64,000 nucleotides of DNA, from assembly GCF_020745735.1 (NCBI RefSeq), contig NC_083446.1:248001-312000 (forward strand), read 5' to 3'. The stretch is from Hemiscyllium ocellatum. Lineage: Eukaryota. Numbering within the stretch: the stretch's first letter is position 1; the number at the start of each line of letters is the position of its first letter. The position numbers and the translations under genes were made by a program. The notes beneath the pieces were generated by a model. The model was not told the origin of the DNA, did not search any database, and saw only the letters and a program-made list of their open reading frames with translations. Of the stretch, positions 11,853 to 63,018 are shown piece after piece.

Positions 11853-14800
11853 TGTGTGTGTGTGTGTGTGTAACTGTGGGAGGTGCGTGTGTGTGTGTAA
11901 CTGTGGGAGGGTGGGGGGGAGGTGTGTGTGTGTGTAACTGTGGGAGGGTTGGGGGGAGGTGTGTGTGTGTGTAACTGTGGGAGGGTTGGGGGGAGGTGTG
12001 TGTGTGTGTGTAACTGTGGGAGGGTTGGGGGGAGGTGTGTGTGTGTGTGTAACTGTGGGAGGGTTGGGGGGAGGTGTGTGTGTGTAACTGTGGGAGGGTT
12101 GGGGGGAGGTGTGTGTGTGTAACTGTGGGAGGGTTGGGGGGAGGTGTGTGTGTGTAACTGTGGGAGGGTTGGGGGGAGGTGTGTGTGTGTAACTGTGGGA
12201 GGGTTGGGGGGAGGTGTGTGTGTGTAACTGTGGGAGGGTTGGGGGGAGGTGTGTGTGTGTAACTGTGGGAGGGTTGGGGGGAGGTGTGTGTGTGTAACTG
12301 TGGGAGGGTTGGGGGGAGGTGTGTGTGTGTAACTGTGGGAGGGTTGGGGGGAGGTGTGTGTGTGTAACTGTGGGAGGGTTGGGGGGAGGTGTGTGTGTAA
12401 CTGTGGGAGGGTTGGGGGTTTGTGTGTGTGTGTGAGTGTAACTGTGGGAGGGTTGGGGGGAGGTGTGTGTGTGTAACTGTGGGAGGGTTGGGGGTTTGTG
12501 TGTGTGTGTGTGAGTGTAACTGTGGGAGGGTTGGGGGGAGGTGTGTGTGTGTAACTGTGGGAGGGTTGGGGGTTTGTGTGTGAGTGTAACTGTGGGAGGG
12601 TTGGGGGGAGGTGTGTGTGTGTAACTGTGGGAGGGTTGGGGGTTTGTGTGTGTGTGTGAGTGTAACTGTGGGAGGGTTGGGGGGAGGTGTGTGTGTGTAA
12701 CTGTGGGAGGGTTGGGGGTTTGTGTGTGTGTGTGAGTGTAACTGTGGGAGGGTTGGGGGGAGGTGTGTGTGTGTAACTGTGGGAGGGTTGGGGGGAGGTG
12801 TGTGTGTGTAACNNNNNNNNNNNNNNNNNNNNNNNNNNNNNNNNNNNNNNNNNNNNNNNNNNNNNNNNNNNNNNNNNNNNNNNNNNNNNNNNNNNNNNNN
12901 NNNNNNNNNNNNNNNNNNNNNNNNNNNNNNNNNNNNNNNNNNNGGGGGGAGGTGTGTGTGTGTAACTGTGGGAGGGTTGGGGGGAGGTGTGTGTGTGAGT
13001 GTAACTGGGAGGGTTGGGGGGAGGTGTGAGTGTGTANNNNNNNNNNNNNNNNNNNNNNNNNNNNNNNNNNNNNNNNNNNNNNNNNNNNNNNNNNNNNNNN
13101 NNNNNNNNNNNNNNNNNNNNNNNNNNNNNNNNNNNNNNNNNNNNNNNNNNNNNNNNNNNNNNNNNNNNNNNNNNNNNNNNNNNNNNNNNNNNNNNNNNNN
13201 NNNNNNNNNNNNGGGGGGAGGTGTGTGTGTGTAACTGTGGGAGGGTTGGGGGGAGGTGTGTGTGTGTGTGTGTAACTGTGGGAGGGTTGGGGGGAGGTGT
13301 GTGTGTGTAACTGTGGGAGGGTTGGGGGGAGGTGTGTGTGTGTAACTGGGAGGGTTGAGGGGAGGTGTGTGTGTGTAACTGTGGGAGGGTTGGGGGGAGG
13401 TGTGTGTGTGTAACTGTGGGAGAGTTGGGGGGAGGTGTGTGTGTGTGTAACTGTGGGAGGGTTGGGGGGAGGTGTGTGTGTGTGTGTAACTGGGAGGGTT
13501 GGGGGGAGGTGTGTGTGTGTAACTGTGGGAGGGTTGGGGGGAGGTGTGTGTGTGTGTAACTGGGAGGGTTGGGGGGAGGTGTGTGTGTGTGTGTAACTGT
13601 GGGAGGGTTGGGGGGAGGTGTGTGTGTGAGTGTAACTGTGGGAGGGTTGGGGGGAGGTGTGTGTGTGTGTAACTGTGGGAGGGTTGGGGGGAGGTGTGTG
13701 TGTGTGTGTGTAACTGTGGGAGGGTTGGGGGGAGGTGTGTGTGTGTGTGTGTAACTGTGGGAGGGTTGGGGGGAGGTGTGTGTGTGTAACTGGGAGGGTT
13801 GAGGGGAGGTGTGTGTGTGTAACTGTGGGAGGGTTGGGGGGAGGTGTGTGTGTGTAACTGTGGGAGAGTTGGGGGGAGGTGTGTGTGTGTGTGTAACTGT
13901 GGGAGGGTTGGGGGGAGGTGTGTGTGTGTGTGTAACTGGGAGGGTTGGGGGGAGGTGTGTGTGTGTAACTGTGGGAGGGTTGGGGGGAGGTGTGTGTGTG
14001 TGTGTAACTGGGAGGGTTGGGGGGAGGTGTGTGTGTGTGTGTAACTGTGGGAGGGTTGGGGGGAGGTGTGTGTGAGTGTAACTGTGGGAGGGTTGGGTGG
14101 AGGTGTGTGTGTGTGAGTGTAACTGTGGGAGGGTTGGGGGGAGGTGTGTGTGTGAGTGTAACTGTGGGAGGGTTGGGTGGAGGTGTGTGTGTGTGAGTGT
14201 NNNNNNNNNNNNNNNNNNNNNNNNNNNNNNNNNNNNNNNNNNNNNNNNNNNNNNNNNNNNNNNNNNNNNNNNNNNNNNNNNNNNNNNNNNNNNNNNNNNN
14301 NNNNNNNNNNNNNNNNNNNNNNNNNNNNNNNNNNNNNNNNNNNNNNNNNNNNNNNNNNNNNNNNNNNNNNNNNNNNNNNNNNNNNNNNNNNNNNNNNNNN
14401 NNNNNNNNNNNNNNNNGGGGGGAGGTGTGTGTGTGTAACTGTGGGAGGGTTGGGGGGAGGTGTGTGTGTGTNNNNNNNNNNNNNNNNNNNNNNNNNNNNN
14501 NNNNNNNNNNNNNNNNNNNNNNNNNNNNNNNNNNNNNNNNNNNNNNNNNNNNNNNNNNNNNNNNNNNNNNNNNNNNNNNNNNNNNNNNNNNNNNNNNNNN
14601 NNNNNNNNNNNNNNNAGGTGTGTGTGTGTNNNNNNNNNNNNNNNNNNNNNNNNNNNNNNNNNNNNNNNNNNNNNNNNNNNNNNNNNNNNNNNNNNNNNNN
14701 NNNNNNNNNNNNNNNNNNNNNNNNNNNNNNNNNNNNNNNNNNNNNNNNNNNNNNNNNNNNNNNNNAGGTGTGTGTGTGTNNNNNNNNNNNNNNNNNNNNN

Positions 14801-16200
14801 NNNNNNNNNNNNNNNNNNNNNNNNNNNNNNNNNNNNNNNNNNNNNNNNNNNNNNNNNNNNNNNNNNNNNNNNNNNNNNNNNNNNNNNNNNNNNNNNNNNN
14901 NNNNNNNNNNNNNNNNNNNNNNNNNNNNNNNNNNNNNNNNNNNNNNNNNNNNNNNNNNNNNNNNNNNNNNNNNNNNNNNNNNNNNNNNNNNNNNNNNNNN
15001 NNNNNNNNNNNNNNNNNNNNNNNNNNNNNNNNNNNNNNNNNNNNNNNNNNNNNNNNNNNNNNNNNNNNNNNNNNNNNNNNNNNNNNNNNNNNNNNNNNNN
15101 NNNNNNNNNNNNNNNNNNNNNNNNNNNNNNNNNNNNNNNNNNNNNNNNNNNNNNNNNNNNNNNNNNNNNNNGGGTGGAGGTGTGTGTGTGTGTGTGTAAC
15201 TGTGGGAGGGTTGGGTGGAGGTGTGTGTGTGTGTGTGTGTGTGTGTAACTGTGGGAGGGTTGGGTGGAGGGGTTTGTGTGTGTGTGTGTGAGAGAGAGAC
15301 TGTAACTGTGGGAGGGTTGGGTGGAGGGGTTTGTGTGTGTGTGTGTGTGTTTGTAACTGTGGGAGGGTTGGGTGGAGGGGTTTGTGTGTGTGTGTGTGAG
15401 AGAGACTGTAACTGTGGGAGGGTTGGGTGGAGGGGTTTGTGTGTGTGAGAGAGACTAACTGTGGGAGGGTTGTGTGTGTGTGTGAGAGAGAGAGACTGTA
15501 ACTGTGGGAGGGTTGGGTGGAGGGGTTTCTGTGTGTGTGTGTGTGAGAGAGACTGTAACTGTGGGAGGGTTGGGTGGAGGTGTGTGTGTGTAACTGTGGG
15601 AGGGTTGGGTGGAGGGGTTTGTGTGTGTGTGTGTGTGTGTGTGTAACTGTGGGAGGGTTGGGTGGAGGGGTTTGTGTGTGTGTGTGTGTGAGAGAGACTA
15701 ACTGTGGGAGGGTTGTGTGGAGGGGTTTGTGTGTGTGTGTGTGTGAGAGAGACTGTAACTGTGGGAGGGTTGGGTGGAGGGGTTTCTGTGTGTGTGTGTG
15801 TGAGTGAGACTGTAACTGTTGGAGGGTTGGGTGGAGGTGTGTGTGTGTAACTGTGGGAGGGTTGGGTGGAGGGGTTTGTGTGTGTGTGTGTGTGAGTGTA
15901 ACTGTGGGAGGGTTGGGTGGAGGGGTTTGTGTGTGTGTGTGTGAGAGAGACTGTAACTGTGGGAGGGTTGGGTGGAGGGGTTTGTGTGTGTGTGTGTGTG
16001 TAACTGTGGGAGGGTTGGGTGGAGGGGTTTGTGTGTGTGTGTGTGTGTGAGAGAGAGACTGTAACTGTGGGAGGGTTGGGTGGAGGGGTTTGTGTGTGTG
16101 TGTGTGAGAGAGACTGTAACTGTGGGAGGGTTGGGTGGAGGGGTTTGTGTGTGTGTGTGTGAGAGAGACTGTAACTGTGGGAGGGTTGGGTGGAGGGGTT

Positions 16201-16231
<31 letters not shown>

Positions 16232-16260
16232 CTGTAACTGTGGGAGGGTTGGGTGGAGGG

Positions 16261-16298
<38 letters not shown>

Positions 16299-16384
16299 CT
16301 GTAACTGTGGGAGGGCTGGGTGGAGGGGTTTGTGTGTGTGTGTGTGTGAGAGAGACTGTAACTGTGGGAGGGTTGGGTGGAGGG

Positions 16385-16422
<38 letters not shown>

Positions 16423-16502
16423 CTGTAACTGTGGGAGGGTTGGGTGGAGGGGTTTGTGTGTGTGTGAGAGAGACTGTAACTGTGGGAGGGTTGGGTGGAG
16501 GG

Positions 16503-16548
<46 letters not shown>

Positions 16549-16637
16549 CTGTAACTGTGGAAGGGTTGGGTGGAGGGGTTTGTGTGTGTGTGTGTGAGAG
16601 AGAGACTGTAACTGTGGGAGGGTTGGGTGGAGGGGTT

Positions 16638-16674
<37 letters not shown>

Positions 16675-16703
16675 CTGTAACTGTGGGAGGGTTGGGTGGA
16701 GGG

Positions 16704-16745
<42 letters not shown>

Positions 16746-16777
16746 CTGTAACTGTGGAAGGGTTGGGTGGAGGGGTT

Positions 16778-16810
<33 letters not shown>

Positions 16811-17095
16811 CTGTAACTGTGGGAGGGTTGGGTGGAGGGGTTTGTGTGTGTGTGTGTGAGAGAGACACTGTAACTGTGGGAGGGTTGGGTGGAGGGGTTT
16901 GTGTGTGTGTGTGTGAGAGAGACACTGTAACTGTGGGAGGGTTGGGTGGAGGGGTTTGTGTGTGTGTGTGTGAGAGAGAGACTGTAACTGTGGGAGGGTT
17001 GGGTGGAGGGGTTTGTGTGTGTGTTGTGTGTTTGTGTGTGTAACTGTGGGAGGGTTGGGGAGAGGGGTGTGTGTGTGTGTGACTGGAACTGTGGG
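11853..17095. repeat. Compound G-rich satellite: (GT)n + AACTGTGGGAGGGTTGGG... units, with several N-gaps
   Basis: Direct periodicity; two sub-arrays with different unit tails; source of the spurious 1861-aa and 1778-aa ORFs. Confidence 0.97.
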
Positions 17096-17399
17096 AGTGT
17101 TGGCGGGGGGGAGGTGGGGTACAGGACTGTACCCCACATGGTCGGAGGGGTGGGTAAGAGACTGTAACCTGAAGGTGTGAGGAGAGGTTACGTAACAAAA
17201 AAAATACTTTCACTACCCCAGAATATTGGCAGGTTCCTTCAGAGTTCTTTTCAAAATGTAAGTTGCAAACAGAGCCAATAGTTTGCACACAGCATAGCTA
17301 AGTCAAGGGTGTTGGCTTCTCCTTATCTCGAAAGCTTCATGTTTAGAAATCATGTAGAATCATCAATACTGTCTGAAAGATTGAGAGAAAATTATTGAA

Positions 17400-22685: not shown

Positions 22686-25600
22686 GTACAGATATCCGGA
22701 ACGGGGATGAGAACTACAGGGGCACTGACTGGGGAGGGGATGGGGACAGGGTAGGAGATGGGAAGTTATGTAAGAGGCAGGTGGAGACAGGGAGTCTATG
22801 TGTGTAATGATAGGGAGAGGTGGGAGATGGGGAGACAGTGAACTCCAAGAGCTTTTTCTCTGTCAATCTTGAAGCAATTTATTTTTATATAAATGTATAA
22901 ATAACTTGTTGAATCTGTGCTTTTGAGTTCCTGAGAAATCAGAGAATTCTTGGCACAGAATCAACTGGATTGTTTGGGAAATGGTTGTCTGCCAAGTCAA
23001 TGTGATTTACTGAGTTGTCTGCTCCTGTGCCCAATTCTCTAGTTTTCCGCTGCCATTAAATCTGTTAGTGACCGAGGTACTTTCTCATTCACACTGATTC
23101 CGCAGCTGTGACATACCTGACAAAGATTCATCTGAATTCAGCCTCCTTCAAATCTGCTCTGCCATGCTATAGGATAATGGCTGATCTGATTGCTCATCAT
23201 TCCCATTCATGTTTGATTCATTCCCTTGTTAATCAGGAGTCTCTAGATCTACTGTTATGATCCCAGCTGATGGTACAACTGGACAAGTCAGATCCCAGAG
23301 TGAAATCTAGTCTGACAGATCTTTTTGGAAATTTTAGTTATGTGGTGCTGGTCACTGAAACACAGTTACACAAGGTAACAACAAAACAGATCCTTATAGC
23401 ACACAGCTTTGAAATGGAAAATACATTTAAAAATCAGCTATCTGGATTTAGCACACTAAGAAAAATCTCAAAACAAACAGCAGAACAGAATTTCAACCTA
23501 TTGTTCAACACCATTACTTCATAGCAAGTCTATAGAAGTTCCATTTTGGTTCTAAAATCTTGAGTGTTCATTTTAACTGATATTTCCCAGTTTCTATCCT
23601 TGTGAACTGTGGTGTCATCTCATATAAACATACAACACTGAAAGTTTAGGCTTCCTCAGCTTCTAATCATTGCAAATTCCTTTTCTGCACAAATTAAACA
23701 TTTCTACTTCCTTGAAAGCTCTGAAAATAATTTTTCTGAAAAAAATATTTCTGCTTCTGACCCTGCTCAGGTCCCCTCTGAACAGCCTTAAAACTTTGCA
23801 AACTCTAAGCAAAGAAATCTCCAACTCAAAGTAAAACTGGAAGACAACATTTTCTGCCTTGAACAATAGATGTTTCCTCTAAGCTTAAAAGGCCGATGTT
23901 TATAAATTTCTAACAGACCTTAAAGCATAATGGTTTACTTTACTAAGTCATAAGGTAAACAATGGCTACAGAAATACTCACAAGGTAGTTATTAACTTCA
24001 GTTGCACAGAAAGGCCACATGTCACTATTTCAAAATCCAAAACTCTACACGTGACACAAATGATATTAAAACACATATAAATCACATAGGCGACATCACA
24101 ATATAAATCTTGGCCTTGTTAAGTTGTAACCTGACCATCTTGTGCAGGTTTGACCCACCCTGAAATCTAAAACTCTCCCTTCTGTACCAGTTTTCTGGGC
24201 ACGTTTTCATTCTCTCAACCTTCCTATTTCTAGAGTTAACAACACATCATACCAGGAGCAATCCTGAGGTGACAGGTCCTGCTTTTTGACCTCCTGCCTA
24301 GCTCCTTAAATTTGAATTTCAGGACCAACTCCCTCCGTTACTGACACCGTTGCTGTCAGAATGGTCAAACTCCATGACATTCTTGATTCTGGCATCAGAG
24401 AGGAAACATACTATGACTAGGGCCACAGAAATGCCTGTCTGCTCCCCTACCAAAAGGCCTTTCATCTGAGAGGGTGGGGAGAGATTGTGAGAGAGGGTGG
24501 GGAAAGAGTGGGGGGTGGGGATAAATGTAAGGGTGAGGGTGGGGAGTGACTGTGAGAGAGGGTGGGGAGAGATGTAAGGGAGTGGGGAGAGAGTGAGATG
24601 GGATGGGGTGGGGAGAGAGTGAAATGGGGGGTAAGAGTGTGAGAGAGGGTGGGGAGAGAGTATGATGGGTTGGGCATAGAGTGAGAGTGAGGTGGGGAGA
24701 GAGTGGGGGTTGGATGGGAAGAGAGTGAGGAGGGATGGTGGGGAGACTGAGGGGACTGGGAGAGAATGGTGAGGGAGAGTGAGGGGGAGGAAGTGCTAGT
24801 CCAATTTATAGGTAAGTGAGGGTTGGCTGTTCCCACGCTGGACTGTTTCCAGGCTGGTATGTTGCTGGCTGAATGAAATGTCTTTTTTTTTTAAGTGCCC
24901 TACTATGACCTATTAAACTCACTGGCTTGTAGTTGTTTGCTTTCTGTCTCCAGAATCCAGGGAATTTTGGAAAAATTAAAACTAATGCTTCAACTACCAT
25001 TTCTCACACCAGAGAATGAAGTCCGTGAGGATATGGGGATTTGTCAGATTTCAGTTGTAATAATGTTTTCTCTCTCCCTGGTGGTGACTTTTCAAGTTCC
25101 TCACTCTCTTTCAGCCTATGATTCACAATTATTTCTGGGATGTTATTTGTATCCGTTACACTGAAAACACATGCAAGTTATCTGTCAAATTTATCTGCCA
25201 TTTCCTTACTTTAAATGATTTGTCTCCGGACACTGCCTCGAGAGGTCTAGCCTGACAGTAGTTACGTTTTTCCTTTTTGAACATTGGTAAATGCCTGTAT
25301 TACTTGTTTATGTTTCTGGCGAACAATCTTTACCTGGAATTGTTCCTTCCTTATTAAGCTTTTGGTCTTTTTTTTGGTTTCCGTTTACACTCTCCGATCT
25401 TCTGACCTGTCGTTCAATTTTGTAGAATCATATGCCCCTGCTTTCAACTCCACCCAATCTTACCCTCCTCACTTAGAGAAAAACCACACAACCAGGTTAT
25501 AGTCCAACAAGTTTATTTGGAAGCACTAGCTTTCGGTACGCTGCTCCTTTGTCAGGTAGCTAGTTTCACTGGCCTCCTCACTCAGCTTGTTCTATCACTA

Positions 25601-39789: not shown

Positions 39790-41469
39790 GTGGAAGACAT
39801 GAGTAATATCCCAAAAATTAAAGGGAGTCACAGGGCTGAGTTGAGTATGGTTGCCATTACGAAAGAGATAGTGCTAGAAAAGTTAAAAGGTCTTAAAATT
39901 GATAAATCTCCTGGCCCCGATGGGATACACTCTAGAGTTCTGAGAGAGGTGGCTGAGGAAATAGCAGAGGCATTGGTTGAGATCTTTCAAGAGTCACTGG
40001 AGTCAGGAAAGGTCCCAGATGATTGGAAGATGGCTGTTGTAACCCCCTTGTTCAAGAAAGGATCAAGGCAAAAGATGGAAAATTATAGGCCAATCAGTTT
40101 AACCTCGGTTGTTGGTAAAATTCTAGAATCCATCATTAAGGATGAGGTTACTAAATTCTTGGAAGAGCAGAGTCTGATTAGAACAAGTCAACATGGATTT
40201 AGTAAGGGGAGGTCATGCCTGACAAACCTGTTGGAGTTTTTTGAAGAGGTAACAAGTAGGTTAGACCAGGGAAACCCAGTGGATGTGGTCTATCTAGACT
40301 TTCAAAAGGCCTTTGATAAGGTGCCACACGGGAGGCTGCTGAGCAAGGTGAGGGCCCATGGTGTTCGAGGTGAGCTGCTGGGATGGATTGAGGATTGGCT
40401 GTCTAACAGAAGGCAGAGAGTTGGAATAAAAGGTTCTTTTTCAGAATGGCAGCCGGTGACGAGCGGTGTCCCGCAGGGTTCGGTGTTGGGGCCACAGCTA
40501 TTCGCATTATATATTAATGATTTGGATGAGGGGACTGGGGGCATTCTAGCGAAGTTTGCCGATGATACGAAGTTAGGTGGACAGGCAGGTAGTACTGAGG
40601 AAGTGGGGAGGCTACAGAAGGATCTAGACAGGCTGGGAGAGTGGTCCAGGAAATGGCTGATGGAATTTAACGTGAGCAAGTGCGAGGTCTTGCACTTTGG
40701 CAAAAAGAATAAAAGCATAGACTACTTTCTAAATGGTGAGAAAATTAGTAAAGCCAAAGTACAAAGGGATCTGGGAGTGCTAGTCGAGGATTCTCTAAAG
40801 GTAAACATGCAGGTTGAGTCCGTGATTAAGAAAGCAAATGCAATGTTGTCTCTTATCTCAAGAGGGTTGGAATATAAAAACAGAGATGTGCTACTGAGAC
40901 TCTATAAAGCTCTGGTTAGGCCCCATTTGGAGTACTGTGTCCAGTTTTGGTCCCCACACCTCAGGAAGGACATACTGGCACTGAAGCGTGTCCAGCAGAG
41001 ATTCACACGGATGATCCCTGGAATGGCAGGTCTAACATATGAGGAACGGCTGAGGATCCTGGGATTGTATTCGTTGGAGTTTAGAAGATTGAGGGGAGAC
41101 TTAATAGAGACGTACAAGATAATACATGGCTTGGAAAAGGTGGACGCTAGGAAATTGTTTCCGTTAGGTGAGGAGACTAGGACCCGTGGACACAGCCTTA
41201 GAATTAGAGGGGGTCAATTCAGAACAGAAATGCGGAGACATTTCTTCAGCCAGAGAGTGGTGGGCCTGTGGGATTCATTGCCACGGAGTGCAGTGGAGGC
41301 CGGGACGCTAAATGTCTTCAAGGCCGAGATCGATAGATTCTTGTTGTCTCGAGGAATTAATGCTGGTAAGTGGAGTTGAAATGCCAATCAGCCATGATTG
41401 AATGGTGGAGTGGACTCGATGGGCCGAATGGCCTTACTTCCACTCCTATGTCTTATGGGCTTATGGTCT
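39790..41469 (+). mobile_element. Young 5'-truncated CR1 LINE with an uninterrupted 529-codon reverse-transcriptase ORF (39790-41379)
   Basis: KSPGPDG, NYRPISL, QHGF, YLDFQKAFD, GVPQGSVLGP, FADD motifs with no stops or frameshifts; no APE endonuclease domain; CTTATG-type tail at ~41445-41469. Confidence 0.96.
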
Positions 41470-42900
41470 GGAGTTTCTTTATCAGAGCCAACAGAAAAGC
41501 TTGATGAGGGTAATGCTGTTAATGTGGTATACATGAATGCATTTGATACTGTCCACAACAGTTACAAGTCATCGATTTAAAATAGTCGGTAGCAACATGG
41601 ATACAAAATGGGCTGAGTGATAGGAAAGAGTCATAGAGATGTACAGCATGGAAACAGACCCTTCGGTCCAACCCTCCATGCCAACCAGATATCCCAACCC
41701 AATCTAGTCCCACCTACCAGCACCCGGCCCATATCCCTCCAAACCCTTTCTAATCATATACCCATCCAGATGCCTTTTAAATGTTGCAGTTGCACCAGCC
41801 TCCACCACTTCCTCTGGCAGCTTATTCCATACATGTACCACCCTCTGAGTGAAAACGTTGCCTCTCAGGTCTCTTTTATATCTTTCCCATCTAGTTCTGG
41901 ACTCTCCACGCTTGGGAAAAGACTTTGTCTATTTACCCTATCCATGCCCCTCATAATTTTGTAAACCTCCGACGCTCCAGGGAAAACAGCCCCAGCCTGT
42001 TCAGCCTTTCCCTGTAGCTCAAATCCTCTAACCCTGGCAATAGCCTTGTAAATCTTTTCTGAACCCTTTCAAGTTTCACAACATCCTTCTGATATGAAGG
42101 AGACCAGAATTGTACACAATATTCCAACAGGAGCCTAACCGCTGTCCTGAACAGCCGCAACATGACCTCCCAACTCCTGTACTAAATACTCTGACCAATA
42201 AAGGAAAGCATACCAAATGCCTTCTTCACTATCCTATCTACCTGCAACTCCACTTTCAAGGAGCTATGAACCTGCACTCCAAGGTCTCTTTGTTCAGCAA
42301 CTCTCCCTAGGACCTTACCATTAAGTTTACAAGTCCTACTAAGATATGCTTTCCCAAAATGCAGCACCTCACATTTATCTAAATTAAACTCCATCTGCCA
42401 CTTCTCAGCCCATTGGTCTACCTGATCAAGATCCTGTTGTAATCGGAGGTAACCTTCTTCATTGTCCACGATAGCTCCAATTTTGGTGTCATCAGCAAAC
42501 ATACTAACTATATCTCTTACATTCACATCCAAATCATTTACATAAATGATGAAAAGTAGAGGACCCAGCATCAATCCTTGCAGCACTCCACTGGCAACAG
42601 GCCTCCAGTCTGAAAAGCAACCCTCCACCACTACCCTGTCTTCTACCTTTGAGCCAGTTCTGCATCCAAATAGTGAGTACTCCCTGTATTCTGTGAGATC
42701 TAACCTTGCTCACCAGCCTCCCATGGGGAACCTTGTCAAAAACCTTACTGAAGTCCACATAGATCACATCTACCATTCTGCCCTCATCAATCCTCAGTGT
42801 TACTTCTTCAAAAAACTCAAATCAAGTTTGCGAGACATGAATTCCCACTCACAAAGCCATGTTGACTATCCCGAATCAGTCCTTGCCTTTCCAAATACAT

Positions 42901-42995
42901 ACTGAAAATGTGTTGCTGGTTAAAGCGCAGCAGGTCAGGCAGCATCCAAGGAACAGGAAATTCGACGTTTCGGGCAAAAGCCCTTCATCAGGAAT
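42901..42995 (-). mobile_element. ~95-bp PLE-terminus insertion inside CR1, flanked by an AATACAT direct repeat
   Basis: AATACAT at 42894-42900 and 42993-42999; the body matches the arm of 36480-36672. Confidence 0.82.
42960..42995 (-). ncRNA. Minimal type-I hammerhead ribozyme motif (intact consensus)
   Basis: Minus strand AUUC-CUGAUGA-A-GGGC(UUUU)GCCC-GAAA-CG-UC/GAAU; stem I AUUC:GAAU pairs perfectly. Confidence 0.82.
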
Positions 42996-43209
42996 ACATG
43001 AACATCCTGAGAGAGTAACTGTCAATCAATATTTCTTGGCCTGGAGGAACGGTTGCAGTGCAATTCCCCAGGGGTCAGTATGGTTACCCTTGCTTAACTT
43101 GATGTATATTAATGATCTGGATCTTGGTGTGTAGCAGTCAGTTTCAAAGTTTGTAGGTTATGCGAAACTTGGGAGAACTGCAAACTGTGAGGAGAACAAG
43201 GTGGAACTT

Positions 43210-44410
43210 CAGATGGACATTGACGGGTGGGTGGAGTGGGTGAATTGGTGACGGATGGACATTGACGGGTGGGTGGAGTGGGTGAATTGGTGACAGATGG
43301 ACATTGACGGGTGGGTGGAGTGGGTGAATCGGTAACAGATGGACATTGACGGGTGGGTGGAGTGGGTGAATCGGTGACAGATGGACATTGACGGGTGGGT
43401 GGAGTGGGTGAATTGGTGACGGATGGACATTGACGGGTGGGTGGAGTGGGTGAATCGGTGACAGATGGACATTGACGGGTGGGTGGAGTGGGTGAATCGG
43501 TGACAGATGGACATTGACGGGTGGGTGGAGTGGGTGAATCGGTGACAGATGGACATTGACGGGTGGGTGAATCGGTGACGGATGGACATTGACGGGTGGG
43601 TGGAGTGGGTGAATTGGTGACAGATGGACATTGACGGGTGGGTGGAGTGGGTGAATCGGTGACAGATGGACATTGACGGGTGGGTGGAGTGGGTGAATTG
43701 GTGACAGATGGACATTGACGGGCTGGTGGAGTGGGTGAATTGGTGACGGATGGACATTGACGGGTGGGTGGAGTGGGTGAATTGGTGACGGATGGACATT
43801 GACGGGTGGGTGGAGTGGGTGAATTGGTGACGGATGGACATTGACGGGTGGGTGGAGTGGGTGAATCGGTAACAGATGGACATTGACGGGTGGGTGGAGT
43901 GGGTGAATCGGTAACGGATGGACATTGACGGGTGGGTGGAGTGGGTGAATTGGTGACGGATGGACATTGACGGGTGGGTGGAGTGGGTGAATCGGTGACG
44001 GATGGACATTGACGGGTGGGTGGAGTGGGTGAATCGGTAACAGATGGACATTGACGGGCTGGTGGAGTGGGTGAATCGGTGACAGATGGACATTGACGGG
44101 TGGGTGGAGTGGGTGAATCGGTGACGGATGGACATTGACGGGTGGGTGGAGTGGGTGAATCGGTGACAGATGGACATTGACGGGTGGGTGGAGTGGGTGA
44201 ATTGGTGACGGATGGACATTGACGGGTGGGTGGAGTGGGTGAATCGGTGACAGATGGACATTGACGGGTGGGTGGAGTGGGTGAATTGGTGACAGATGGA
44301 CATTGACGGGTGGGTGGAGTGGGTGAATTGGTGACGGATGGACATTGACGGGTGGGTGGAGTGGGTGAATTGGTGACGGATGGACATTGACGGGCTGGTG
44401 GAGTGGATGA
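43210..44410. repeat. 42-bp minisatellite (CAGATGGACATTGACGGGTGGGTGGAGTGGGTGAATCGGTGA)n, ~28 copies
   Basis: Direct periodicity (14-aa ORF repeats); embedded in CR1 RT sequence. Confidence 0.97.
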
Positions 44411-52600: not shown

Positions 52601-55600
52601 AACCCCCACAGACCCATTCCCCTAACTTATATTTACCCCTGACCAATGCACCTAACACTATGGGCAATTTAGCATGGCCAACTCACCTGACCCGCACATC
52701 TTCAGATTGTGGAGGAAACTGGATCACCCGGAGAAAACCCATACAGACAAGGGGAGGATGTGCAAACTCCACACAGACAGGTGCCTGAGGCAGGAATCGA
52801 ACCCTGGCCCCTGGCGCTGAGAGGCAATAGCGTAGTGCTAATCATTAAGCCACCATGTCGTCCCATTGTGACAGCCTGGCGTGCAATCCTGGCCTCACTC
52901 CTCCAACCGAAGTGTTAGAGCACTGAAGTGGCATACTATCAGACCAGAAGAAACTTCATCTAATGCTGTTCCACACATCCCCTCTCACCTCAAATCCCTC
53001 TCCCAGCTGAGACGATGTCACTACAGAGACAGCAAGTGCCCCCTGCTCAGCACCCAAGAGTCTCAAAGCCGATTAAGTTGGGCTGGGGTGGGGGTGGGGG
53101 GTGGGTGGGTGGTGGTGGTGTTTCAAGACCCAGCCTAATCTAGTCACCACAACAAAGGGGTATATCCTTATGAAAATGGCACATACCTTTAACACATCTT
53201 GGCCACCATCAGTCCTGTTGAAGTTAATCCCAAACCACTTCTGCTTTCCTTTGTAATTGGGAGTGAGATCAAGAATCACCTTGAGACCTGTTTGGACACA
53301 TAATCTGACTGAGTTTCAAGCAGCTGCAGGACAAAGGTGAATATTTGGTTCAGTTTTTAATGGTGATAGCAGATTCATTTGCTATGAGCTTTCAAAATTC
53401 TGTCCAATTTTGTAATAGTGTCCACAGATTGGAGGGTGAAAAATGTAACCCTACTGTTTAAAGGGGGACAAAGCAGAAAACATGGAATTACAGACTGTCA
53501 GCCTGATATCAGTCAGAGAGGAAATGCCAGAACCTAATATAACAGATGTGATAAATGGGCCTTTAAACAAACAGTGAGATGCCTGAATAAAGCAATGTTG
53601 GGAGATCATGGTACAAACCTGTTAAGAGATTTAATATGAGGACATTACTAGCAGAGGGAAAGCTATAGGTTTTCTGGATTCTCACACAAGAGGATCACAA
53701 ACTGAATTAAGGCACACAGGACTGAGGTAGCATAAAAGAATGTGGATTGATTAATAGGCAGAAAGTAGAGAGTGGGAACAACTGGGTCAATCTCAGATTG
53801 GCAAGTTGTAACCAATAGGGTCACAAGGATTTGTGCTTGGGTCCAAATCACAAGCAATATCAATGATCTGGACATAGGATACAGCAATGGAATATCATGT
53901 GGATGTGTGAAGTTATTCAATTTGGCAGGAAAAACAGAAATGCTGAGCATTTCTGAACATCAGCCACTCCAAACAAGACAATCATAGATTCATTACTCCC
54001 TCTTAGTCACAGACTGGGGAGAATGAGGGGCATAAAGAGGGAATCGTGGGGAAGGGGGTTCTCAGGAGAAGGTCTCCTGCTGTTCCCACTGTTACCTCAC
54101 ACCCAGAAAGGGGAATTTTACCCAAATAATGAGAGATAGAATTTATTGGACAGCGCAGTACTGTTTGACTGCAATCCTAGTTACCTTTCCTCCTGGCCAC
54201 CTCCAGCAGCTTCTCCATCTGCTCCAAGGTGCCAAATGTGCTGTCAATCTTGTTCAGCCTCGTCTCGTTGACCATGTCTGCAACATTCTGGTGGATTGGG
54301 CCAATGATGATGCCTTTAACCTTGAGGGCAGCAACCTCCTCCATTCTCTGACTCACTCCTGCAGGTGACAACACATAGATATACATTGAGCACCGCCAAC
54401 TTTACTGAACAAGGTGCCGATCCCAAAGCCTAGTGACAGCCAGAGACTAATCCAGAACACCATCTCACCATCCAGCAGCCCCAAGCCCCGGATCCACCCC
54501 CACAGTAAACCCTCGCACAATGTGTCCCAGACCAGATCCCATCCCCAACATCCAGCCAACTCTCTCAACCCAGGCCAATTCTGCACTGACTCAGCAGCAA
54601 TGCCCCACCCACCGCCCGCCGAAGCCCCACCCACCGCCAGCCCCACCCACCGCCCGCCGAAGCCCCACCCACCGCCAGCCCCACCCACCGCCCGCCGAAG
54701 CCCCACCCACCGCCGCACAAAACCTCCCCGTTGCCAGGGGCGGGACCTAGAGATTAAAGGTGGGGATGCCCCGCCCCCTACGGCTGATGCAACAGGAGAA
54801 CACGCCCCCACCAACCGTCACCCTCCACATACACACCCCCTCCCCCACATACACACCCCCCGACCCTCACCCCCTCCCTCACACACACCCCCCGACCCTC
54901 ACCCCCTCCCTCACACACACCCCCCGACCCTCACCCCCTCCCTCACACACACCCCCCGACCCTCACCCCCTCCCCCACACACACCCCCCGACCCTCACCC
55001 CCTCCCCCACACACACCCCCCGACCCTCACCCCCTCCCCCACACACACCTTCACCCCCGACCCTCACCCCACATCCACTCTCATACCCTCTCCCACCAAC
55101 CGTCACCCTCACCCCCCCCTCGCCCCTCACCCTCTCCCCCCCCTCGCCCCTCACCCTCACCCCCCCCTCGCCCCTCACCCTCACCCCCCCCTCGCCTCGC
55201 CCCTCACCCTCACCCCCCCCGCCCCTCACCCTCACCCCCCCCGCCCCTCACCCCCCCCCCTCACCCTCACCCCCCCCCCCCGGTACCTGCCAGGTCTCCC
55301 TCGCCGTCTCCATCCGAGTCCTGAAAGGCCGGGCTGTGGATGCGGTAGAGGCCGCCGCGCTGCCACCACGGGGAGGGGGGGAGCGGGCGGCAGCGCGGGG
55401 CCTGGACGATGATAACCACCGCCCCGGCCAACATGGCGAGCCAGGCCAGCCAGAAGAGGGTTAGGAGCAGCCAGCGGCTCCGGACCCAGGCCGGGCTGCT
55501 CGCCACCGCCAGCAGCTCATCTTTACTCAGGCCCGTGAACTTAGTGGGAGTCGCAGGCCCAAGGCCCGAGCCGGGACTCGCTTCCCCCTTCTCCCCTTTC

Positions 55601-55722
55601 AGAGCCCCGTTCGTGTCCCCAGCCAGACCCGCTGTCATCGGCAGCTTCTCCTGGTCTACTTCGTTCAGCTCGACCTCCTTAAGGCCCAGCTCAGCGTCCT
55701 TCATCCCGGCCTCAGAGCTCAT
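49324..55722 (-). CDS. SLC3A2: 4F2 cell-surface antigen heavy chain (CD98hc), 545 aa, 9 coding exons
   Basis: KEVELNE..QEKLPM, KFTGLSKDELL, WVRSRW + TM helix, QAPRC (disulfide Cys), LDLTPNY, FWL..GVDG, LFTLPGTP..YGDEIGL, KERSL, GEGLLLNFPYVA*; all introns GT-AG with consistent phases; CDS 1638 nt. Confidence 0.97.
50080..50187 (-). CDS. SLC3A2: SLC3A2 coding exon 8
   Basis: 108 nt, phase 0-0; APWMLWNNS. Confidence 0.9.
50560..50980 (+). mobile_element. CR1 3' fragment (intronic)
   Basis: Decayed RRMSGEISEPYKI / RGHNLKI-like remnants and a tail cttgaagggccaaat. Confidence 0.7.
51127..51264 (-). CDS. SLC3A2: SLC3A2 coding exon 7
   Basis: 138 nt; LFTLPGTPFIYYGDEIGL. Confidence 0.93.
51416..51611 (-). 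CDS. SLC3A2: SLC3A2 coding exon 6
   Basis: 196 nt, phase 2-0; IFIAGT...WPSWA. Confidence 0.92.
51729..51793 (-). CDS. SLC3A2: SLC3A2 coding exon 5
   Basis: 65 nt, phase 0-2; EWQNLTKNFS. Confidence 0.92.
52175..52255 (-). CDS. SLC3A2: SLC3A2 coding exon 4
   Basis: 81 nt; EAFQFWLKMGVDGLSVSGIE; a second in-frame acceptor 6 nt inside is possible. Confidence 0.9.
52529..52862 (-). mobile_element. V-SINE (diverged copy)
   Basis: Similar to 17697-18014. Confidence 0.88.
53187..53287 (-). CDS. SLC3A2: SLC3A2 coding exon 3
   Basis: 101 nt, phase 1-0; LKVILDLTPNYKGKQKWF. Confidence 0.95.
54185..54358 (-). CDS. SLC3A2: SLC3A2 coding exon 2
   Basis: 174 nt, phase 1-1; LKVKGIIIGPIH. Confidence 0.95.
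54735..54795. promoter_or_regulatory. Candidate intronic regulatory module: two GC-boxes plus a C/EBP-ATF response element TGATGCAAC (54785-54793)
   Basis: GGGGCGGGA, GCCCCGCCCC and a TGATGxAAx consensus in a short unique island between C-rich repeats. Confidence 0.5.
54830..55281. repeat. C-rich low-complexity tandem repeats in SLC3A2 intron 1 (also 42-bp units at ~54605-54715)
   Basis: Units such as ccccgaccctcaccccctccctcacacacacc. Confidence 0.9.
55287..55722 (-). CDS. SLC3A2: SLC3A2 coding exon 1 (cytoplasmic tail, TM helix, neck)
   Basis: aacATG at 55722; GCAG|gtaccg donor in phase 1. Confidence 0.95.
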
Positions 55723-55765
55723 GTTAGCGGCTCTCCAAAACACTGCTGTCGGCCTTGAAACTAGA

Positions 55766-56290
55766 AAATACTGCTTCCTACAGCCCCGTGACACTGCAAT
55801 ACTGCTTCCTACAGCCCCGTGACACTGCAATACTGCTTCCTACAGCCGCGACACTGCAATACTGCTTCCCACAGCCCCGCGACACTGCAATACTGCTTCC
55901 CACAGCCCCGCGACACTGCAATACTGCTTCCCACAGCCCCGCGACACTGCAATACTGCTTCCCACAGCCCCGCGACACTGCAATACTGCTTCCTACAGCC
56001 CCGCGACACTGCAATACTGCTTCCCACAGCCCCGCGACACTGCAATACTGCTTCCCACAGCCGCGACACTGCAATACTGCTTCCCACAGCCCCGCGACAC
56101 TGCAATACTGCTTCCCACAGCCCCGTGACACTGCAATACTGCTTCCCACAGCCGCGACACTGCAATACTGCTTCCTACAGCCCCGCGACACTGCAATACT
56201 GCTTCCCACAGCCGCGACACTGCAATACTGCTTCCTACAGCCCCGCGACACTGCAATACTGCTTCCCACAGCCCCGCAACCCTGTAATAC
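55766..56290. repeat. 31-bp minisatellite (GACACTGCAATACTGCTTCCCACAGCCCCGC)n, ~17 copies, starting ~45 bp upstream of the SLC3A2 ATG
   Basis: Direct periodicity with 29-bp variants. Confidence 0.96.
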
Positions 56291-56609
56291 TATTGCTGTA
56301 ATAATCCTACTTCAGTTCCCCAACACGACGCCACAGAACTGCGTCCGTGTGCGCTCTCTAACAACCTATTTGGTTTCCAGACCGTCTCTCTTTCTCTGAG
56401 GAACCCCACCTCACTCCCTTCCCCTTTTAAAGGCTCTGCCAGCCTCCTCCTCCTCCTCATCACTGCAGAATTTAAGGTGGAACTTCCAGTATTCACACTG
56501 CAGGAGAGTTACTAAAACTCTCAGGAGTACAACGACTTCAGGAAATATGGAGAGAGACTGGAGAAATTGGGATTATTCTGCTCTGAGTAGAGAGAGTTAG
56601 GAAAGGAGA

Positions 56610-61585: not shown

Positions 61586-61860
61586 TATAATGTTCTCTCG
61601 ATAATGTTCTCCATGAAGCATTGTATTTCATGCACAATGTCAGAAAGCTGATCGTGGCATTGGTCCCTGGCTCTGGAAGTCGCTGCCTCACATGGACCTT
61701 GGAGGCCTTCACAGCCAGCAAGTAAATGAGAGAGAACTTGGTTTTTTACCTGTTGATGATTCTGATTAGCAACTGAGCCAGATTCGCTCAAACAGGGAAA
61801 CAGGTTCTGGGATCTTTCTGTGCAGTGCACATTGTAATTAAAAGTAACTAGCAGGCTGGG

Positions 61861-62077
61861 CAGAGTTAAAAATCACACAACACCCAGTTATAGTCCAACA
61901 GGTTTAATTGGAAGCACTAGCTTTCAGAGCGCCACTTCTTCATCAGGTGTCCTCCACAACCACCTAATGAAGGAGCGACGCTCCGAAAGCTAGTGCTTCC
62001 AATTAAACCTGTTGGACTATAACCTGGTGTTGTGTGATTTTTAACTCTATCCACCCCAGTCCAACACCAGCATCTCC
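61861..62077. mobile_element. Second-family fold-back element with two inverted hammerhead-like motifs; 11-bp TSD
   Basis: 88-bp inverted arms 61862-61949 and 61961-62048; AGCAGGCTGGG at 61850-61860 and 62078-62088; CAC-CU(G/A)AUGA-A-stemII-GAAA-GC-UA-GUG on each strand. Confidence 0.85.
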
Positions 62078-62329
62078 AGCAGGCTGGGGTTATTTGTCTC
62101 GCGAACAAGTTGGGGGAATGACCCTGAGCCAAAATCCTCCGAGAGCTGAGGCAGCCCTGATGGGCCAGTGGCTCCTTCCTGCACCATTCCAATTGTGTGT
62201 TTCAGAAGGAGAGAGTATGATTTATTTTGCCCTATTTGTGGTTTGGTGGGTGCCAGGTGTTAAATACCATTTCCTGTACTGACTGTGACTAAGCTGGGAG
62301 TCCAGTTTGTGCTTGCCCTGTTTAGCCAA

Positions 62330-63018
62330 CTTGGTGTGCAGGTTCATAGCTCCTTAAAAGTGGAGTTGCAGGTAGATAGGATAGTGAAGAAGGCATTTCC
62401 TTTATTGGTCAGAGTATTGAGTACAGGAGTTGGGAGGTTATGTTGCGGCTGTACAGTACATTGGTTAGGCACTGTTGGAATATTGTGTGCAATTCTGGTC
62501 TCCTTCCTCTTGGAAAGATGTTGTGAAACTTGAAAGCATTCAGAAAAGATTTACAAGGATGTTGCCAGGGTTGGAGGATTTGAGCTACAGGGAGAGGCTG
62601 AACAGGCTGGGGCTGTTTTCCCTGGAGCTCGGAGGCTGAGGGGTGACCTTGTAGAGGTTTATAAAATCAAGAGGGCATGGATAAGGTAAAAAGACAAAGT
62701 CTTTTCTCTAGGGTGGGGGAGTCCAGAACTAGAGGGCATAGGTTTAGGGTGAGAGGGGAAAAATGTAAAAGAGAACTAAGGGCCAACGTTTTCACGCAGT
62801 GGGTGATACATGTTTGGAATGAGCTGCCAGAGGAAGTGGTGGAGGCTAATACAATTGCAACATTTTAAAAGGCATCTGGATGGGTATATGATTAGGAAGG
62901 GTTTGGAGGGACATGGGCCGGGTGCTGGCAGGTGGGACTAGATTGGGTTGGGATATCTGGTCAGCATGGACGAGTTGGACCGAAGGTCTGTTTCTGTGCT
63001 GTACATCTCTATGACTAT
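62330..63018 (+). mobile_element. CR1 (HER1-like) 3' fragment with tail
   Basis: ESRTRGHRFRVRGE...WNELPEEVVEA; tail ggaccgaaggtctgtttctgtgctgtacatctctatgact. Confidence 0.92.

What the first reader, a model, noticed from the sequence alone, without database searches (positions are those of the whole stretch)
61850..62088. Second, unrelated fold-back family with back-to-back hammerheads on both strands
Seen: a 217-bp insert with an 11-bp TSD and 88-bp inverted arms. Plus strand: CAC-CUAAUGA-A-GGAGC GAC GCUCC-GAAA-GC-UA-GUG (61961-61995). Minus strand: CAC-CUGAUGA-A-GAAGU GGC GCUCU-GAAA-GC-UA-GUG (61949-61915). Versus family 1, stems I and II differ in sequence yet still pair, the palindromic loop is GC instead of CG, and the extra A is kept, which is natural covariation support. 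Each copy has a lesion. Partial relatives at ~25477-25560 and ~36110-36177. Inference: the same architecture arose in two families, giving ribozymes in both polarities.
Basis: partly seen in the sequence, partly recalled or inferred. Interest (0 to 1): 0.8.

Follow-up and report, generated by a model that had tools for sequence, protein, structure and literature searches.

The report
Head-to-head Penelope tail stubs with hammerheads
This 217-base insert is an old, decayed pair of Penelope-like retrotransposon tail ends inserted head-to-head in a shark-like genome, so the "hammerheads on both strands" are two damaged mirror copies of one known kind of minimal ribozyme, not a new two-polarity ribozyme system.

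Summary
An exact 11-bp direct repeat flanks a 217-bp insert (61861-62077). Its two arms are about 91% complementary, and each carries a minimal type-I hammerhead motif. That motif occurs far more often in the window than shuffled sequence gives.

The anatomy is the published signature of a Penelope-like element (PLE) insertion:
- two 5'-truncated copies of the element's 3' end, joined head-to-head;
- a 28-nt AC-rich "tail" on one end only;
- a target duplication whose length varies among copies (11, 13 and 14 bp in this window).

Contigs from public runs show a very large family in at least three related species. Coverage rises toward the 3' end, and copies end at two discrete points about 30 nt apart. 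The insertion is also present at the same site in two other species, so it is old.

Both local hammerheads are damaged. The plus copy has A at core position G5, where 98% of the family has G. The minus copy has a weakened helix II. In a transcript of either strand the motif would be buried in a -135 to -157 kcal/mol hairpin.

Two marine metagenome contigs carry the same hammerhead variant next to reverse transcriptase and GIY-YIG genes.

The scan has already described this kind of element on other DNA of this genome. This is a new member of a known kind, of low interest.

The parts
61850..61860 (.). Left copy of the 11-bp target-site duplication AGCAGGCTGGG
   Evidence: Exact direct repeat. 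Contigs of two other species join this flank to the first 24 nt of the element (records 25 and 9).
61861..61949 (-). Left arm: an inverted, 5'-truncated copy of the PLE 3' end, without the tail. Its 3' end abuts the target duplication and its 5' end is at the CAC that opens the hammerhead.
   Evidence: It ends at the equivalent of 62049, inside the family's first cluster of 3' ends (table 7).
61915..61949 (-). Minus-strand minimal hammerhead motif. The core CUGAUGA and GAAA are intact. Helix II is weakened (GAAGU/GCUCU: one A-C mismatch and two G-U pairs).
   Evidence: Family majority letters at 61937 and 61934 give GGAGC. The isolated fold is only -3.7 kcal/mol and is not a hammerhead shape; the double-hammerhead form scores +1.5.
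61950..62077 (+). Right arm: a direct, 5'-truncated copy of the PLE 3' end.
   Evidence: Contigs of other copies begin at 61952-61956 and run to 62076-62078 (table 8).
61961..61995 (+). Plus-strand minimal hammerhead motif. Helix II is perfect (GGAGC/GCUCC) and the AGCU palindrome is present, but the core reads CUAAUGA (G5 to A).
   Evidence: At 61966, G makes up 94-98% of family depth in the four runs (98% in X1) (table 3). The predicted cut lies between 61992 and 61993.
62024..62070 (+). Stem-loop CUGGUGUUG (62024-62032) / CAACACCAG (62062-62070). The first family 3' terminus lies in its loop and the second lies just past its 3' strand.
   Evidence: Fold. 3' ends pile up at 62044-62046 and at 62077/62078 (table 7).
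62050..62077 (+). 28-nt 'tail', 79% A+C, present on this arm only
   Evidence: Alignment. About a fifth to a quarter of family depth continues through it. It matches the optional 30-40 bp PLE tail described in PMC8557442 and PMC11167929.
62078..62088 (.). Right copy of the 11-bp target-site duplication
   Evidence: Contigs of two other species join 62059-62077 to this flank (records 32 and 16).
25477..25572 (-). Single-arm relative of the same family with a degenerate hammerhead (CUGACAA; helix II has one mismatch). It is flanked by a 13-bp direct repeat matching at 12 of 13 positions (25464-25476 and 25573-25585).
36110..36176 (-). Single-arm relative with an internal deletion that removes the 3' half of helix II and GAAA

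Best explanation
The insert is the product of one Penelope-like element (PLE) integration event. The GIY-YIG endonuclease nicked both target strands 11 bp apart. Each freed 3' end primed reverse transcription at one of two internal start sites near the 3' end of the PLE RNA. One start lay past the AC-rich stem-loop and gave the arm with the 28-nt tail. The other lay inside the loop and gave the arm without it. Both cDNAs stopped early, about 90 and 128 nt in, just upstream of the hammerhead in the pseudo-LTR. They were then joined 5' end to 5' end. The result is a fold-back with 3' ends facing outward, a tail on one side and an 11-bp target duplication.

The two hammerheads are therefore mirror copies of one minimal, dimer-type PLE ribozyme. 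In active elements this ribozyme probably processes tandem PLE transcripts with help from the element's protein. Here it is a passenger. The insertion is old and fixed, and both copies have since been damaged.

Shown here: the anatomy, the family-wide pattern of ends, the shared insertion in three species and the lesions. Inferred: priming on both strands, the use of two start sites, and the ribozyme's role.
For: Anatomy of this locus:
- Exact 11-bp duplication, and arms with their 3' ends outward.
- A 28-nt, 79% A+C extension on the right arm only.
- Both arms share C at the 62047 position, where 96% of family depth has T. This points to one source.
- 7 of the 8 arm differences are transitions, several at CpG sites, as expected for decay after insertion.

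Family evidence:
- 66,000-76,000 contigs per DNA run lie on the element in three species.
- Summed depth rises 5' to 3' along the arm: 2.7M over the core, 12.6M, then 20.5M at 62016-62041. This is the pattern of 5' truncation.
- Copies end in two clusters, 62044-62046 and 62077/62078.
- Core, helix II stems and AGCU show no variant at or above 10% apart from this copy's own lesion. Loop II positions 61977 and 61978 vary freely.

Other copies and relatives:
- Target duplications vary in length: 11, 13 and 14 bp.
- Single-arm copies occur in the window.
- The same hammerhead variant lies downstream of a GIY-YIG-like ORF in L002 and beside an inverted RT fragment in L001. L002 also has an inverted pseudo-LTR piece.

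Literature:
- PMC11167929: a purified PLE protein cleaves and extends both strands and starts reverse transcription at two internal sites in an AC-rich stem-loop. The tail is the stretch between them. The hammerhead needs the protein to cut and is not needed for insertion.
- PMC4209133: minimal hammerheads have an extra nucleotide between 9 and 10.1 and a palindromic 15.2-16.2. Several families occur per genome, and opposite-strand pairs lie 100-700 bp apart.
Against: - No PLE gene lies in this window. The only RT ORF (39790-41379) is LINE-like.
- The autonomous partner with exactly this tail was not found in this genome.
- The metagenome PLEs share the 35-nt hammerhead but not the tail sequence, so they are relatives of the ribozyme, not the parent.
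- The target here is not AT-rich, unlike the preference reported for the Anolis element.
- The first 3' terminus is blurred over roughly 62044-62052, because this copy differs from the family majority at 62047, 62049 and 62051.
- All run data are assembled contigs, so depth is only a rough guide to copy number.
- No cleavage assay exists for this variant.
Confidence: 0.85

Rival explanations
1. It is a miniature inverted-repeat DNA transposon (MITE) whose terminal inverted repeats happen to contain a hammerhead-like string. It would move by cut-and-paste using a transposase encoded elsewhere.
For: Long inverted arms and a flanking direct repeat. The whole insert folds into a very stable hairpin. 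Rfam miRNA-hairpin models score it weakly, as they do for MITE-like hairpins.
Against: - The other copies in the window are single arms with their own direct repeats of different lengths.
- Family depth rises steadily toward one end and copies stop at two discrete 3' sites. This fits reverse transcription, not excision.
- The arms differ in length by a one-sided 28-nt tail.
- The same ribozyme variant sits next to RT and GIY-YIG genes.
- An 11-bp duplication is longer than usual for DNA transposons (general knowledge).
Confidence: 0.04
2. It belongs to a non-autonomous, SINE-like or retrozyme-like short element with its own defined unit (hammerhead plus about 90-nt tail). Such an element would be transcribed on its own and mobilised in trans by a PLE, rather than being random 5'-truncated pieces of a full-length PLE. 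The fold-back would still come from priming on both strands.
For: - All four arms in the window start within a few bases of the hammerhead's 5' edge.
- The family is enormous.
- Earlier notes of this scan describe ORF-less Penelope-derived hammerhead mini-elements and tandem arrays in this genome.
- Animal non-LTR retrozymes are reported to derive from PLE pseudo-LTRs (bioRxiv 10.64898/2026.07.22.740005; PMC7229834).
Against: - Depth falls gradually rather than in one step at a fixed 5' edge.
- Contigs of other copies continue upstream of 61952 with a shared sequence, and continue past 62077 (table 7). Longer forms therefore exist.
- No tandem units occur here.
Confidence: 0.1
3. It is a functional two-polarity ribozyme unit, as in viroid-like or retrozyme circular RNAs that self-cleave in both strands during rolling-circle replication.
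For: A hammerhead motif can be read on each strand. Contigs from probable RNA assemblies in four species contain family members.
Against: - The two motifs are mirror copies of one sequence, not two separate ribozymes.
- One has the G5A core lesion and the other a weakened helix II.
- Each transcript would form a -135 or -157 kcal/mol hairpin, against -8.1 or -3.7 for the hammerhead fold.
- The two motifs cannot dimerise through AGCU, because only one is sense in any one RNA.
- No circular permutation or tandem units are seen.
- The RNA label on those runs is a guess, and contigs cannot show RNA ends.
Confidence: 0.01

Closest known systems
Minimal hammerhead ribozymes of Penelope-like elements (Cervera and de la Pena 2014, PMC4209133)
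   Same: Type-I layout with a short helix I and the CUGAUGA and GAAA boxes. It has an unpaired nucleotide between A9 and G10.1, a G10.1-C11.1 pair and a helix II longer than the canonical 4 bp. Helix III is reduced to A15.1-U16.1 around a palindromic dinucleotide, which implies action as a dimer. Several consensus families occur per genome, most copies are solitary, and some pairs lie on opposite strands.
   Different: This is a specific sequence family (helix II GGAGC/GCUCC, AGCU, cut after UA) in a shark-like genome. The two local copies are damaged. Cleavage has not been tested for this variant.
PLE insertion architecture: inverted 5'-truncated copy plus one-sided tail (Craig et al. 2021, PMC8557442; Frangieh et al. 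2024, PMC11167929)
   Same: Head-to-head inverted copies with their 3' ends outward. An optional extension of about 30 nt sits at one end only. Two discrete 3' termini flank an AC-rich stem-loop. The target duplication varies in length and 5' truncation is heavy.
   Different: Both copies are truncated to about 90-130 nt, so nothing but the pseudo-LTR tail survives. The tail is 28 nt, at the short end of the published 30-40 bp range. The target is not AT-rich.
Family 1 of this window (36480-36672 fold-back; 42894-42999 stub)
   Same: Same kind of element: a minimal hammerhead followed by a 60-90 nt tail. It occurs as a fold-back with a 14-bp target duplication and a tail on one arm only.
   Different: No significant sequence similarity outside the ribozyme boxes. 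Helix II is GGGC/GCCC with a UUUU loop, the palindrome is ACGU and the cut follows UC. In the family-1 fold-back the inverted arm stops near the cut site rather than upstream of the whole motif.
Animal non-LTR retrozymes (Cervera and de la Pena 2020, PMC7229834; Li et al. 2026, bioRxiv 10.64898/2026.07.22.740005)
   Same: Non-coding sequences that bear type-I hammerheads and are related to PLE pseudo-LTRs. They are reported in one cartilaginous fish.
   Different: Retrozymes are direct tandem repeats with a hammerhead in each unit and yield circular RNAs. Here the two copies are inverted, with no tandem unit.
MITEs and miRNA-like hairpins
   Same: Inverted arms, a flanking direct repeat and a long hairpin. 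Rfam MIR845_1 scores 48.5 bits.
   Different: The Rfam score is below the gathering threshold of 81 bits. The family's structure shows reverse transcription from a 3' end, not cut-and-paste.

Membership tests
Hammerhead ribozyme, minimal PLE type | Conserved core C3-U4-G5-A6-N7-G8-A9 ... G12-A13-A14 ... U16.1-H17 | tested here: inconclusive
   The minus copy has the full core. The plus copy has A at G5. 98% of family depth has G there, so the family meets the feature but this copy does not.
Hammerhead ribozyme, minimal PLE type | Helix II closed by G10.1-C11.1, with one unpaired nucleotide between A9 and G10.1 | tested here: met
   Plus copy: A, then GGAGC-GAC-GCUCC, 5 bp. Minus copy: same layout with one mismatch and two wobble pairs. 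The family majority restores GGAGC.
Hammerhead ribozyme, minimal PLE type | Helix III reduced to A15.1-U16.1 around a palindromic insert, allowing a double hammerhead | tested here: met
   AGCU in both arms, in the 25.5-kb copy and in L001/L002. The computed double-hammerhead energy of -16.3 equals two monomers at -8.1 each, so the gain is marginal.
Hammerhead ribozyme, minimal PLE type | Match to a curated covariance model (Rfam Hammerhead families) | tested here: not met
   No hammerhead hit at E<=10. The consensus-perfect family-1 motif also fails, so the models do not cover this minimal form.
Hammerhead ribozyme, minimal PLE type | Self-cleavage at the predicted site | not testable with these tools
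   This needs transcription and cleavage assays. Published minimal PLE hammerheads cut poorly alone and need dimers or the PLE protein (PMC4209133, PMC11167929).
Penelope-like element insertion | 5'-truncated copies with an adjacent inverted copy and 3' ends outward | tested here: met
   family depth gradient.
Penelope-like element insertion | Optional tail of about 30-40 bp at one end only, and two discrete 3' termini | tested here: met
   The 28-nt extension is on the right arm only. Ends pile up at 62044-62046 and at 62077/62078 in all four runs.
Penelope-like element insertion | Target-site duplication of variable length | tested here: met
   11 bp here, 13 bp at 25.5 kb, and 14 bp at the family-1 fold-back.
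Penelope-like element insertion | Terminus shared with an element encoding a telomerase-like RT and a GIY-YIG endonuclease | tested here: inconclusive
   There is no PLE ORF in the window. The same 35-nt hammerhead variant lies beside RT (YIDD; RVT_1 E=4.6e-5) and a GIY-YIG-like ORF (Atlas score 0.97 to PF01541 clusters) in metagenome contigs L001 and L002, but their tails differ.
MITE (DNA transposon) | Family members are complete fold-backs with a fixed-length target duplication | tested here: not met
   The other copies are single arms. Duplications are 11, 13 and 14 bp. Depth shows a gradient and ends cluster at 3' sites.
Non-LTR retrozyme | Direct tandem units, each with a hammerhead | tested here: not met
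   Only an inverted pair is present here; there is no direct tandem.

The most novel reading that the evidence does not exclude
Fold-back insertions of this very abundant PLE-tail family would give hairpin RNAs of about 90 bp when transcribed within host genes. Small-RNA pathways could process these into guides against the PLE's reverse-transcription entry site and hammerhead. Such loci would then act as host-side traps that silence the element, which might also help explain why this one has been kept in three species.
Probability: 0.06. Interest if true: 0.5.

Novelty: new member of a known kind. Interest (0 to 1): 0.18.

Why it matters
On its own it matters little. It is a clean, small example of how Penelope-like elements insert, and another family of their minimal hammerheads.

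Its modest value is as natural evidence for a model so far based on one lizard element in vitro: two-strand priming from two internal start sites. Here a shark-like genome holds a family with the same two-terminus pattern around an AC-rich stem-loop. One insertion shows one arm from each terminus.

The family-wide invariance of the core, helix II stems and the AGCU palindrome, set against a freely varying loop II, is consistent with selection on the ribozyme in the active lineage.

For annotation, such fold-backs should be masked as PLE fragments. They should not be called MITEs, miRNA precursors or new ribozyme systems.

Tried and rejected
- Rfam search, whole window at gathering threshold and the locus at E<=10. 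No hammerhead family was found, only sub-threshold miRNA-hairpin look-alikes. One search showed that Rfam also misses an intact minimal hammerhead, so the negative says nothing.
- Search for an autonomous PLE in the window. The only RT ORF (39790-41379) matches LINE-1 and R2 proteins best. Most other long ORFs overlap minisatellite arrays.
- My early idea that all copies start at a fixed 5' edge just upstream of the hammerhead, which would imply a defined RNA 5' end. The four arms in the window suggested it. Family contigs extend upstream with shared sequence and depth falls gradually, so I demoted it to a rival.
- Test for hidden homology between families 1 and 2. Nothing was significant. A shared 9-mer, CCAGCATCT, in both tails gave p=0.07 and lies at different distances from the end.
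- Pfam on the L002 ORF gave no GIY-YIG hit. The assignment rests on the VIY...YIGET motif and Atlas neighbours.
- Loose ends 'before 61993', which looked like 5' ends at the cut site. They turned out to be copies with a GT insertion after 61992 that breaks the alignment (tables 4 and 7).
- The search of earlier findings by sequence returned nothing.

Full report
**Observation**

AGCAGGCTGGG occurs exactly at 61850-61860 and 62078-62088, bounding a 217-bp insert at 61861-62077. The repeat finder reports inverted arms of 96 nt at 90% complementarity. A four-way alignment shows that true homology is 61861-61949 against 61961-62049, with 8 differences in 89 positions, 7 of them transitions and several at CpG sites. 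The few extra bases in the figure are a chance extension into the direct repeat.

My hammerhead descriptor asked for a helix I of at least 3 bp, CUGAUGA with at most one mismatch, zero or one extra base, a helix II, GAAA, a short insert and UH. It finds exactly three sites in the 64-kb window:
- + 61961-61995;
- - 61949-61915;
- the family-1 motif at - 42995-42960.

One hundred dinucleotide-preserving shuffles give 0.01 strict and 0.10 relaxed hits, against 2 and 3 observed. The partial relatives at 25474-25557 and 36110-36176 are real.

First, the right arm carries a 28-nt, 79% A+C extension (62050-62077) between the end of arm homology and the target duplication. The left arm lacks it.

Second, the 11 nt between the arms (61950-61960) is not filler. 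Contigs of other family copies begin at 61952-61956 and run through to 62076-62078 (table 8). Loose-end consensus sequences from other copies also show similar sequence upstream of the CUGAUGA box (table 7). The right arm is therefore 61950-62077 and the left arm is 61861-61949. They meet 5' end to 5' end, with their 3' ends facing the target duplication.

**The family**

I laid assembled contigs of three DNA runs (coded organisms A, B and C) and one probable RNA assembly (organism D) on 61600-62350 at 80% likeness.

- Size: 66,000-76,000 contigs per DNA run fall on the element, and 10,555 in the probable RNA assembly.
- 5' truncation: summed depth on the right arm rises from 2.7 million over the ribozyme core to 12.6 and then 20.5 million at 62016-62041. 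It falls to 5.0 million over the tail. Unique flanks sit near 25.
- Copy number: the tool warns that summed contig depth is not a copy number. Three loci in 64 kb point the same way, to something like 10^5 copies in a genome of a few gigabases.
- 3' ends: copies stop in two clusters, 62044-62046 (about 3,000 contigs in organism A) and 62077/62078 (about 1,400). All four runs show this pattern. This copy differs from the family majority at 62047, 62049 and 62051, so the first cluster may really extend to about 62052.
- Stem-loop: the two termini bracket the 3' strand of a stem, CUGGUGUUG (62024-62032) with CAACACCAG (62062-62070).
- Longer forms: some contigs run past 62077 into a shared continuation. 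Others run upstream of 61952 into another shared sequence.

**Age**

In organisms B and C, contigs join the left flank to the first 24 nt of the element, and the last 19 nt of the tail to the right flank. Flank identity is 95-97% (records 25, 32, 9, 16). The insertion therefore predates the split of these three species.

Both arms share C at the 62047 position, where 96% of family depth has T. This points to one source for both arms. Their 9% divergence is then mostly decay after insertion.

**The ribozyme motif**

The family-majority motif has these parts:
- helix I, CAC with GUG;
- the core CUGAUGA;
- an unpaired A;
- helix II, GGAGC with GCUCC, closed by a 3-nt loop;
- GAAA;
- GC;
- UA, followed by the cut.

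The A15.1-G-C-U16.1 stretch is self-complementary. These are the traits Cervera and de la Pena list for minimal PLE hammerheads (PMC4209133): an extra nucleotide between 9 and 10.1, a conserved G10.1-C11.1 pair, a palindromic 15.2-16.2 and a longer helix II. That paper also reports several families per genome, mostly solitary copies, and pairs on opposite strands 100-700 bp apart.

Across the family, the only positions within 61961-61995 that show variants at 10% or more are this copy's own lesion (61966, where 98% of depth has G) and two loop II positions (61977 and 61978). On the left arm, the majority letters at 61937 and 61934 restore GGAGC (table 3). The active lineage therefore keeps an intact motif. 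At this locus the plus copy has the G5-to-A core change, and the minus copy has a helix II with one mismatch and two wobble pairs.

Folding energies:

| Form | Plus copy / plus RNA | Minus copy / minus RNA |
|---|---|---|
| Isolated 35-mer | -8.1 kcal/mol, hammerhead shape | -3.7 kcal/mol, not a hammerhead shape |
| Double hammerhead (intermolecular AGCU helix, swapped helix I) | -16.3, no better than two monomers | +1.5 |
| Whole-insert hairpin | -135 | -157 |

Neither copy is expected to cleave here. The marginal dimer energy fits the low in vitro activity and protein dependence reported for these ribozymes (PMC4209133, PMC11167929).

Rfam gives no hammerhead hit. It also misses the consensus-perfect family-1 motif, so that negative carries no weight.

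**Link to Penelope-like elements**

No PLE gene lies in this window. The only reverse transcriptase ORF (39790-41379) matches LINE-1 ORF2p and R2 best.

A single scan of metagenome contigs with the 29 specified bases of the motif returned two marine contigs. Both carry CAC-CUGAUGA-A-GGAGC-GGA-GCUCC-GAAA-GC-UA-GUG.

- L002: the motif lies about 750 nt downstream of an ORF with the VIY...YIGET signature. Its nearest Atlas clusters are GIY-YIG proteins of chordates, with a score of 0.97. Pfam itself gave no hit. An inverted copy of a pseudo-LTR segment sits at the contig's start.
- L001: an inverted RT fragment (MDVSSLY...QGTAMGT...YIDD; RVT_1 E=4.6e-5) abuts the hammerhead-bearing repeat.

These contigs tie the ribozyme variant to RT/GIY-YIG elements and show the same head-to-head layout at a larger scale. 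Their tails differ from family 2, so they are not the parent.

Earlier notes of this scan on other parts of this genome describe Penelope hammerhead stubs and Penelope fold-backs with long arms. I treat these as leads. They agree with what I found here.

**Mechanism**

Craig et al. describe PLE insertions as heavily 5'-truncated, often with an adjacent inverted 5'-truncated copy, and with a 30-40 bp tail often at one end only (PMC8557442). Frangieh et al. studied a purified Anolis PLE protein (PMC11167929). They report that:
- the protein cleaves and extends both DNA strands;
- reverse transcription starts at two internal sites in an AC-rich stem-loop, without homology to the target;
- the tail is the stretch between those two sites;
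- the hammerhead needs the protein to cut and is dispensable for insertion in vitro.

The locus fits this point for point. It has two cDNAs primed from the two nicked strands, 11 bp apart. One starts past the stem-loop (the arm with the tail) and one starts within the loop (the arm without it). Both stopped within about 130 nt and were joined at their 5' ends. Target duplications of 11, 13 and 14 bp in the window fit a variable stagger between the two nicks.

Shown here: the anatomy, the family termini, the shared insertion and the lesions. Inferred: two-strand priming and the choice of start sites.

**Rivals**

- A MITE is unlikely. The family consists mainly of single, truncated arms with duplications of variable length.
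- A defined SINE-like or retrozyme-like short unit mobilised in trans remains possible, at about 0.1. Window copies start near the hammerhead edge, and ORF-less derivatives are reported in this genome. Family depth, however, falls gradually and longer forms exist.
- A true two-polarity ribozyme system is not supported.

**Families 1 and 2**

The two families share no significant sequence outside the ribozyme boxes, yet have the same layout. Family 1 also forms a fold-back with a 14-bp duplication and a one-sided tail. This is best read as two PLE lineages inheriting the same ribozyme plan and the same insertion chemistry, not as an architecture arising twice. The change from ACGU to AGCU keeps the palindrome, which agrees with the dimer model. 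As evidence it is weak, because one random dinucleotide in four would do the same.

**Verdict**

The insert is a new member of a known kind: an old, fixed, decayed head-to-head pair of PLE tail stubs carrying minimal hammerheads. Interest is low. The most useful by-product is the family-wide two-terminus pattern, which mirrors in a shark-like genome the dual internal initiation sites seen in vitro for a lizard element.

Noticed in passing
L001 (1050 nt) and L002 (1470 nt), marine metagenome contigs: Two eukaryote-derived contigs in marine metagenomes carry a PLE with the same 35-nt hammerhead variant. L002 has a GIY-YIG-like ORF at 90-581 and an inverted pseudo-LTR piece (1-109 against 983-1091, 94% complementary). 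L001 has an inverted RT fragment abutting the hammerhead-bearing repeat. The host organism is unknown.
   Followed up: partly
window 62046 / 62078 (table 5): In 18-33 contigs per DNA run (the three DNA runs), a copy ending at 62046 is joined directly to an opposite-strand copy starting at 62078. This is a tail-to-tail arrangement, the reverse of the head-to-head one here. It may reflect PLE insertion into the end of an existing copy.
   Followed up: no
window 61961 / 61993 (table 5): Three contigs of organism A show an opposite-strand joint at 61993, the first base after the predicted hammerhead cut. An earlier scan note reported an inverted arm ending at a cut site elsewhere in this genome. 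There are too few cases to interpret.
   Followed up: no
window 61992 (table 4): About 6% of family depth has a GT insertion right after the predicted cleavage dinucleotide UA. This marks a subfamily and breaks alignments at that point.
   Followed up: no
window 36480-36672: The family-1 fold-back has a 14-bp target duplication (GCCATGCTCTCTTG). Its inverted arm carries an extra extension of about 35 nt and stops within a few bases of the hammerhead cut site. It shows the same PLE signature as the finding, from a different family.
   Followed up: partly
window 39790-41379 (+): A 529-aa ORF with an RVT_1 domain (E=5e-33). Its best solved-structure matches are LINE-1 ORF2p and R2. It is a LINE fragment, not a Penelope-like element.
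   Followed up: partly
window 2720-3416, 8850-17081, 25761-26558, 34099-35071, 43210-44410, 54602-56291: The window is dense with minisatellite arrays, with periods of 22-99 bp and lengths up to 2.8 kb. The very long ORFs on both strands, such as 11703-17288 (1861 aa, no Pfam hit), overlap these arrays and look like repeat artefacts.
   Followed up: partly
window 61652-61729: A short stretch about 130 bp left of the insert has 5-15 times the flank depth in the three DNA runs, so it is a piece of another dispersed repeat.
   Followed up: no
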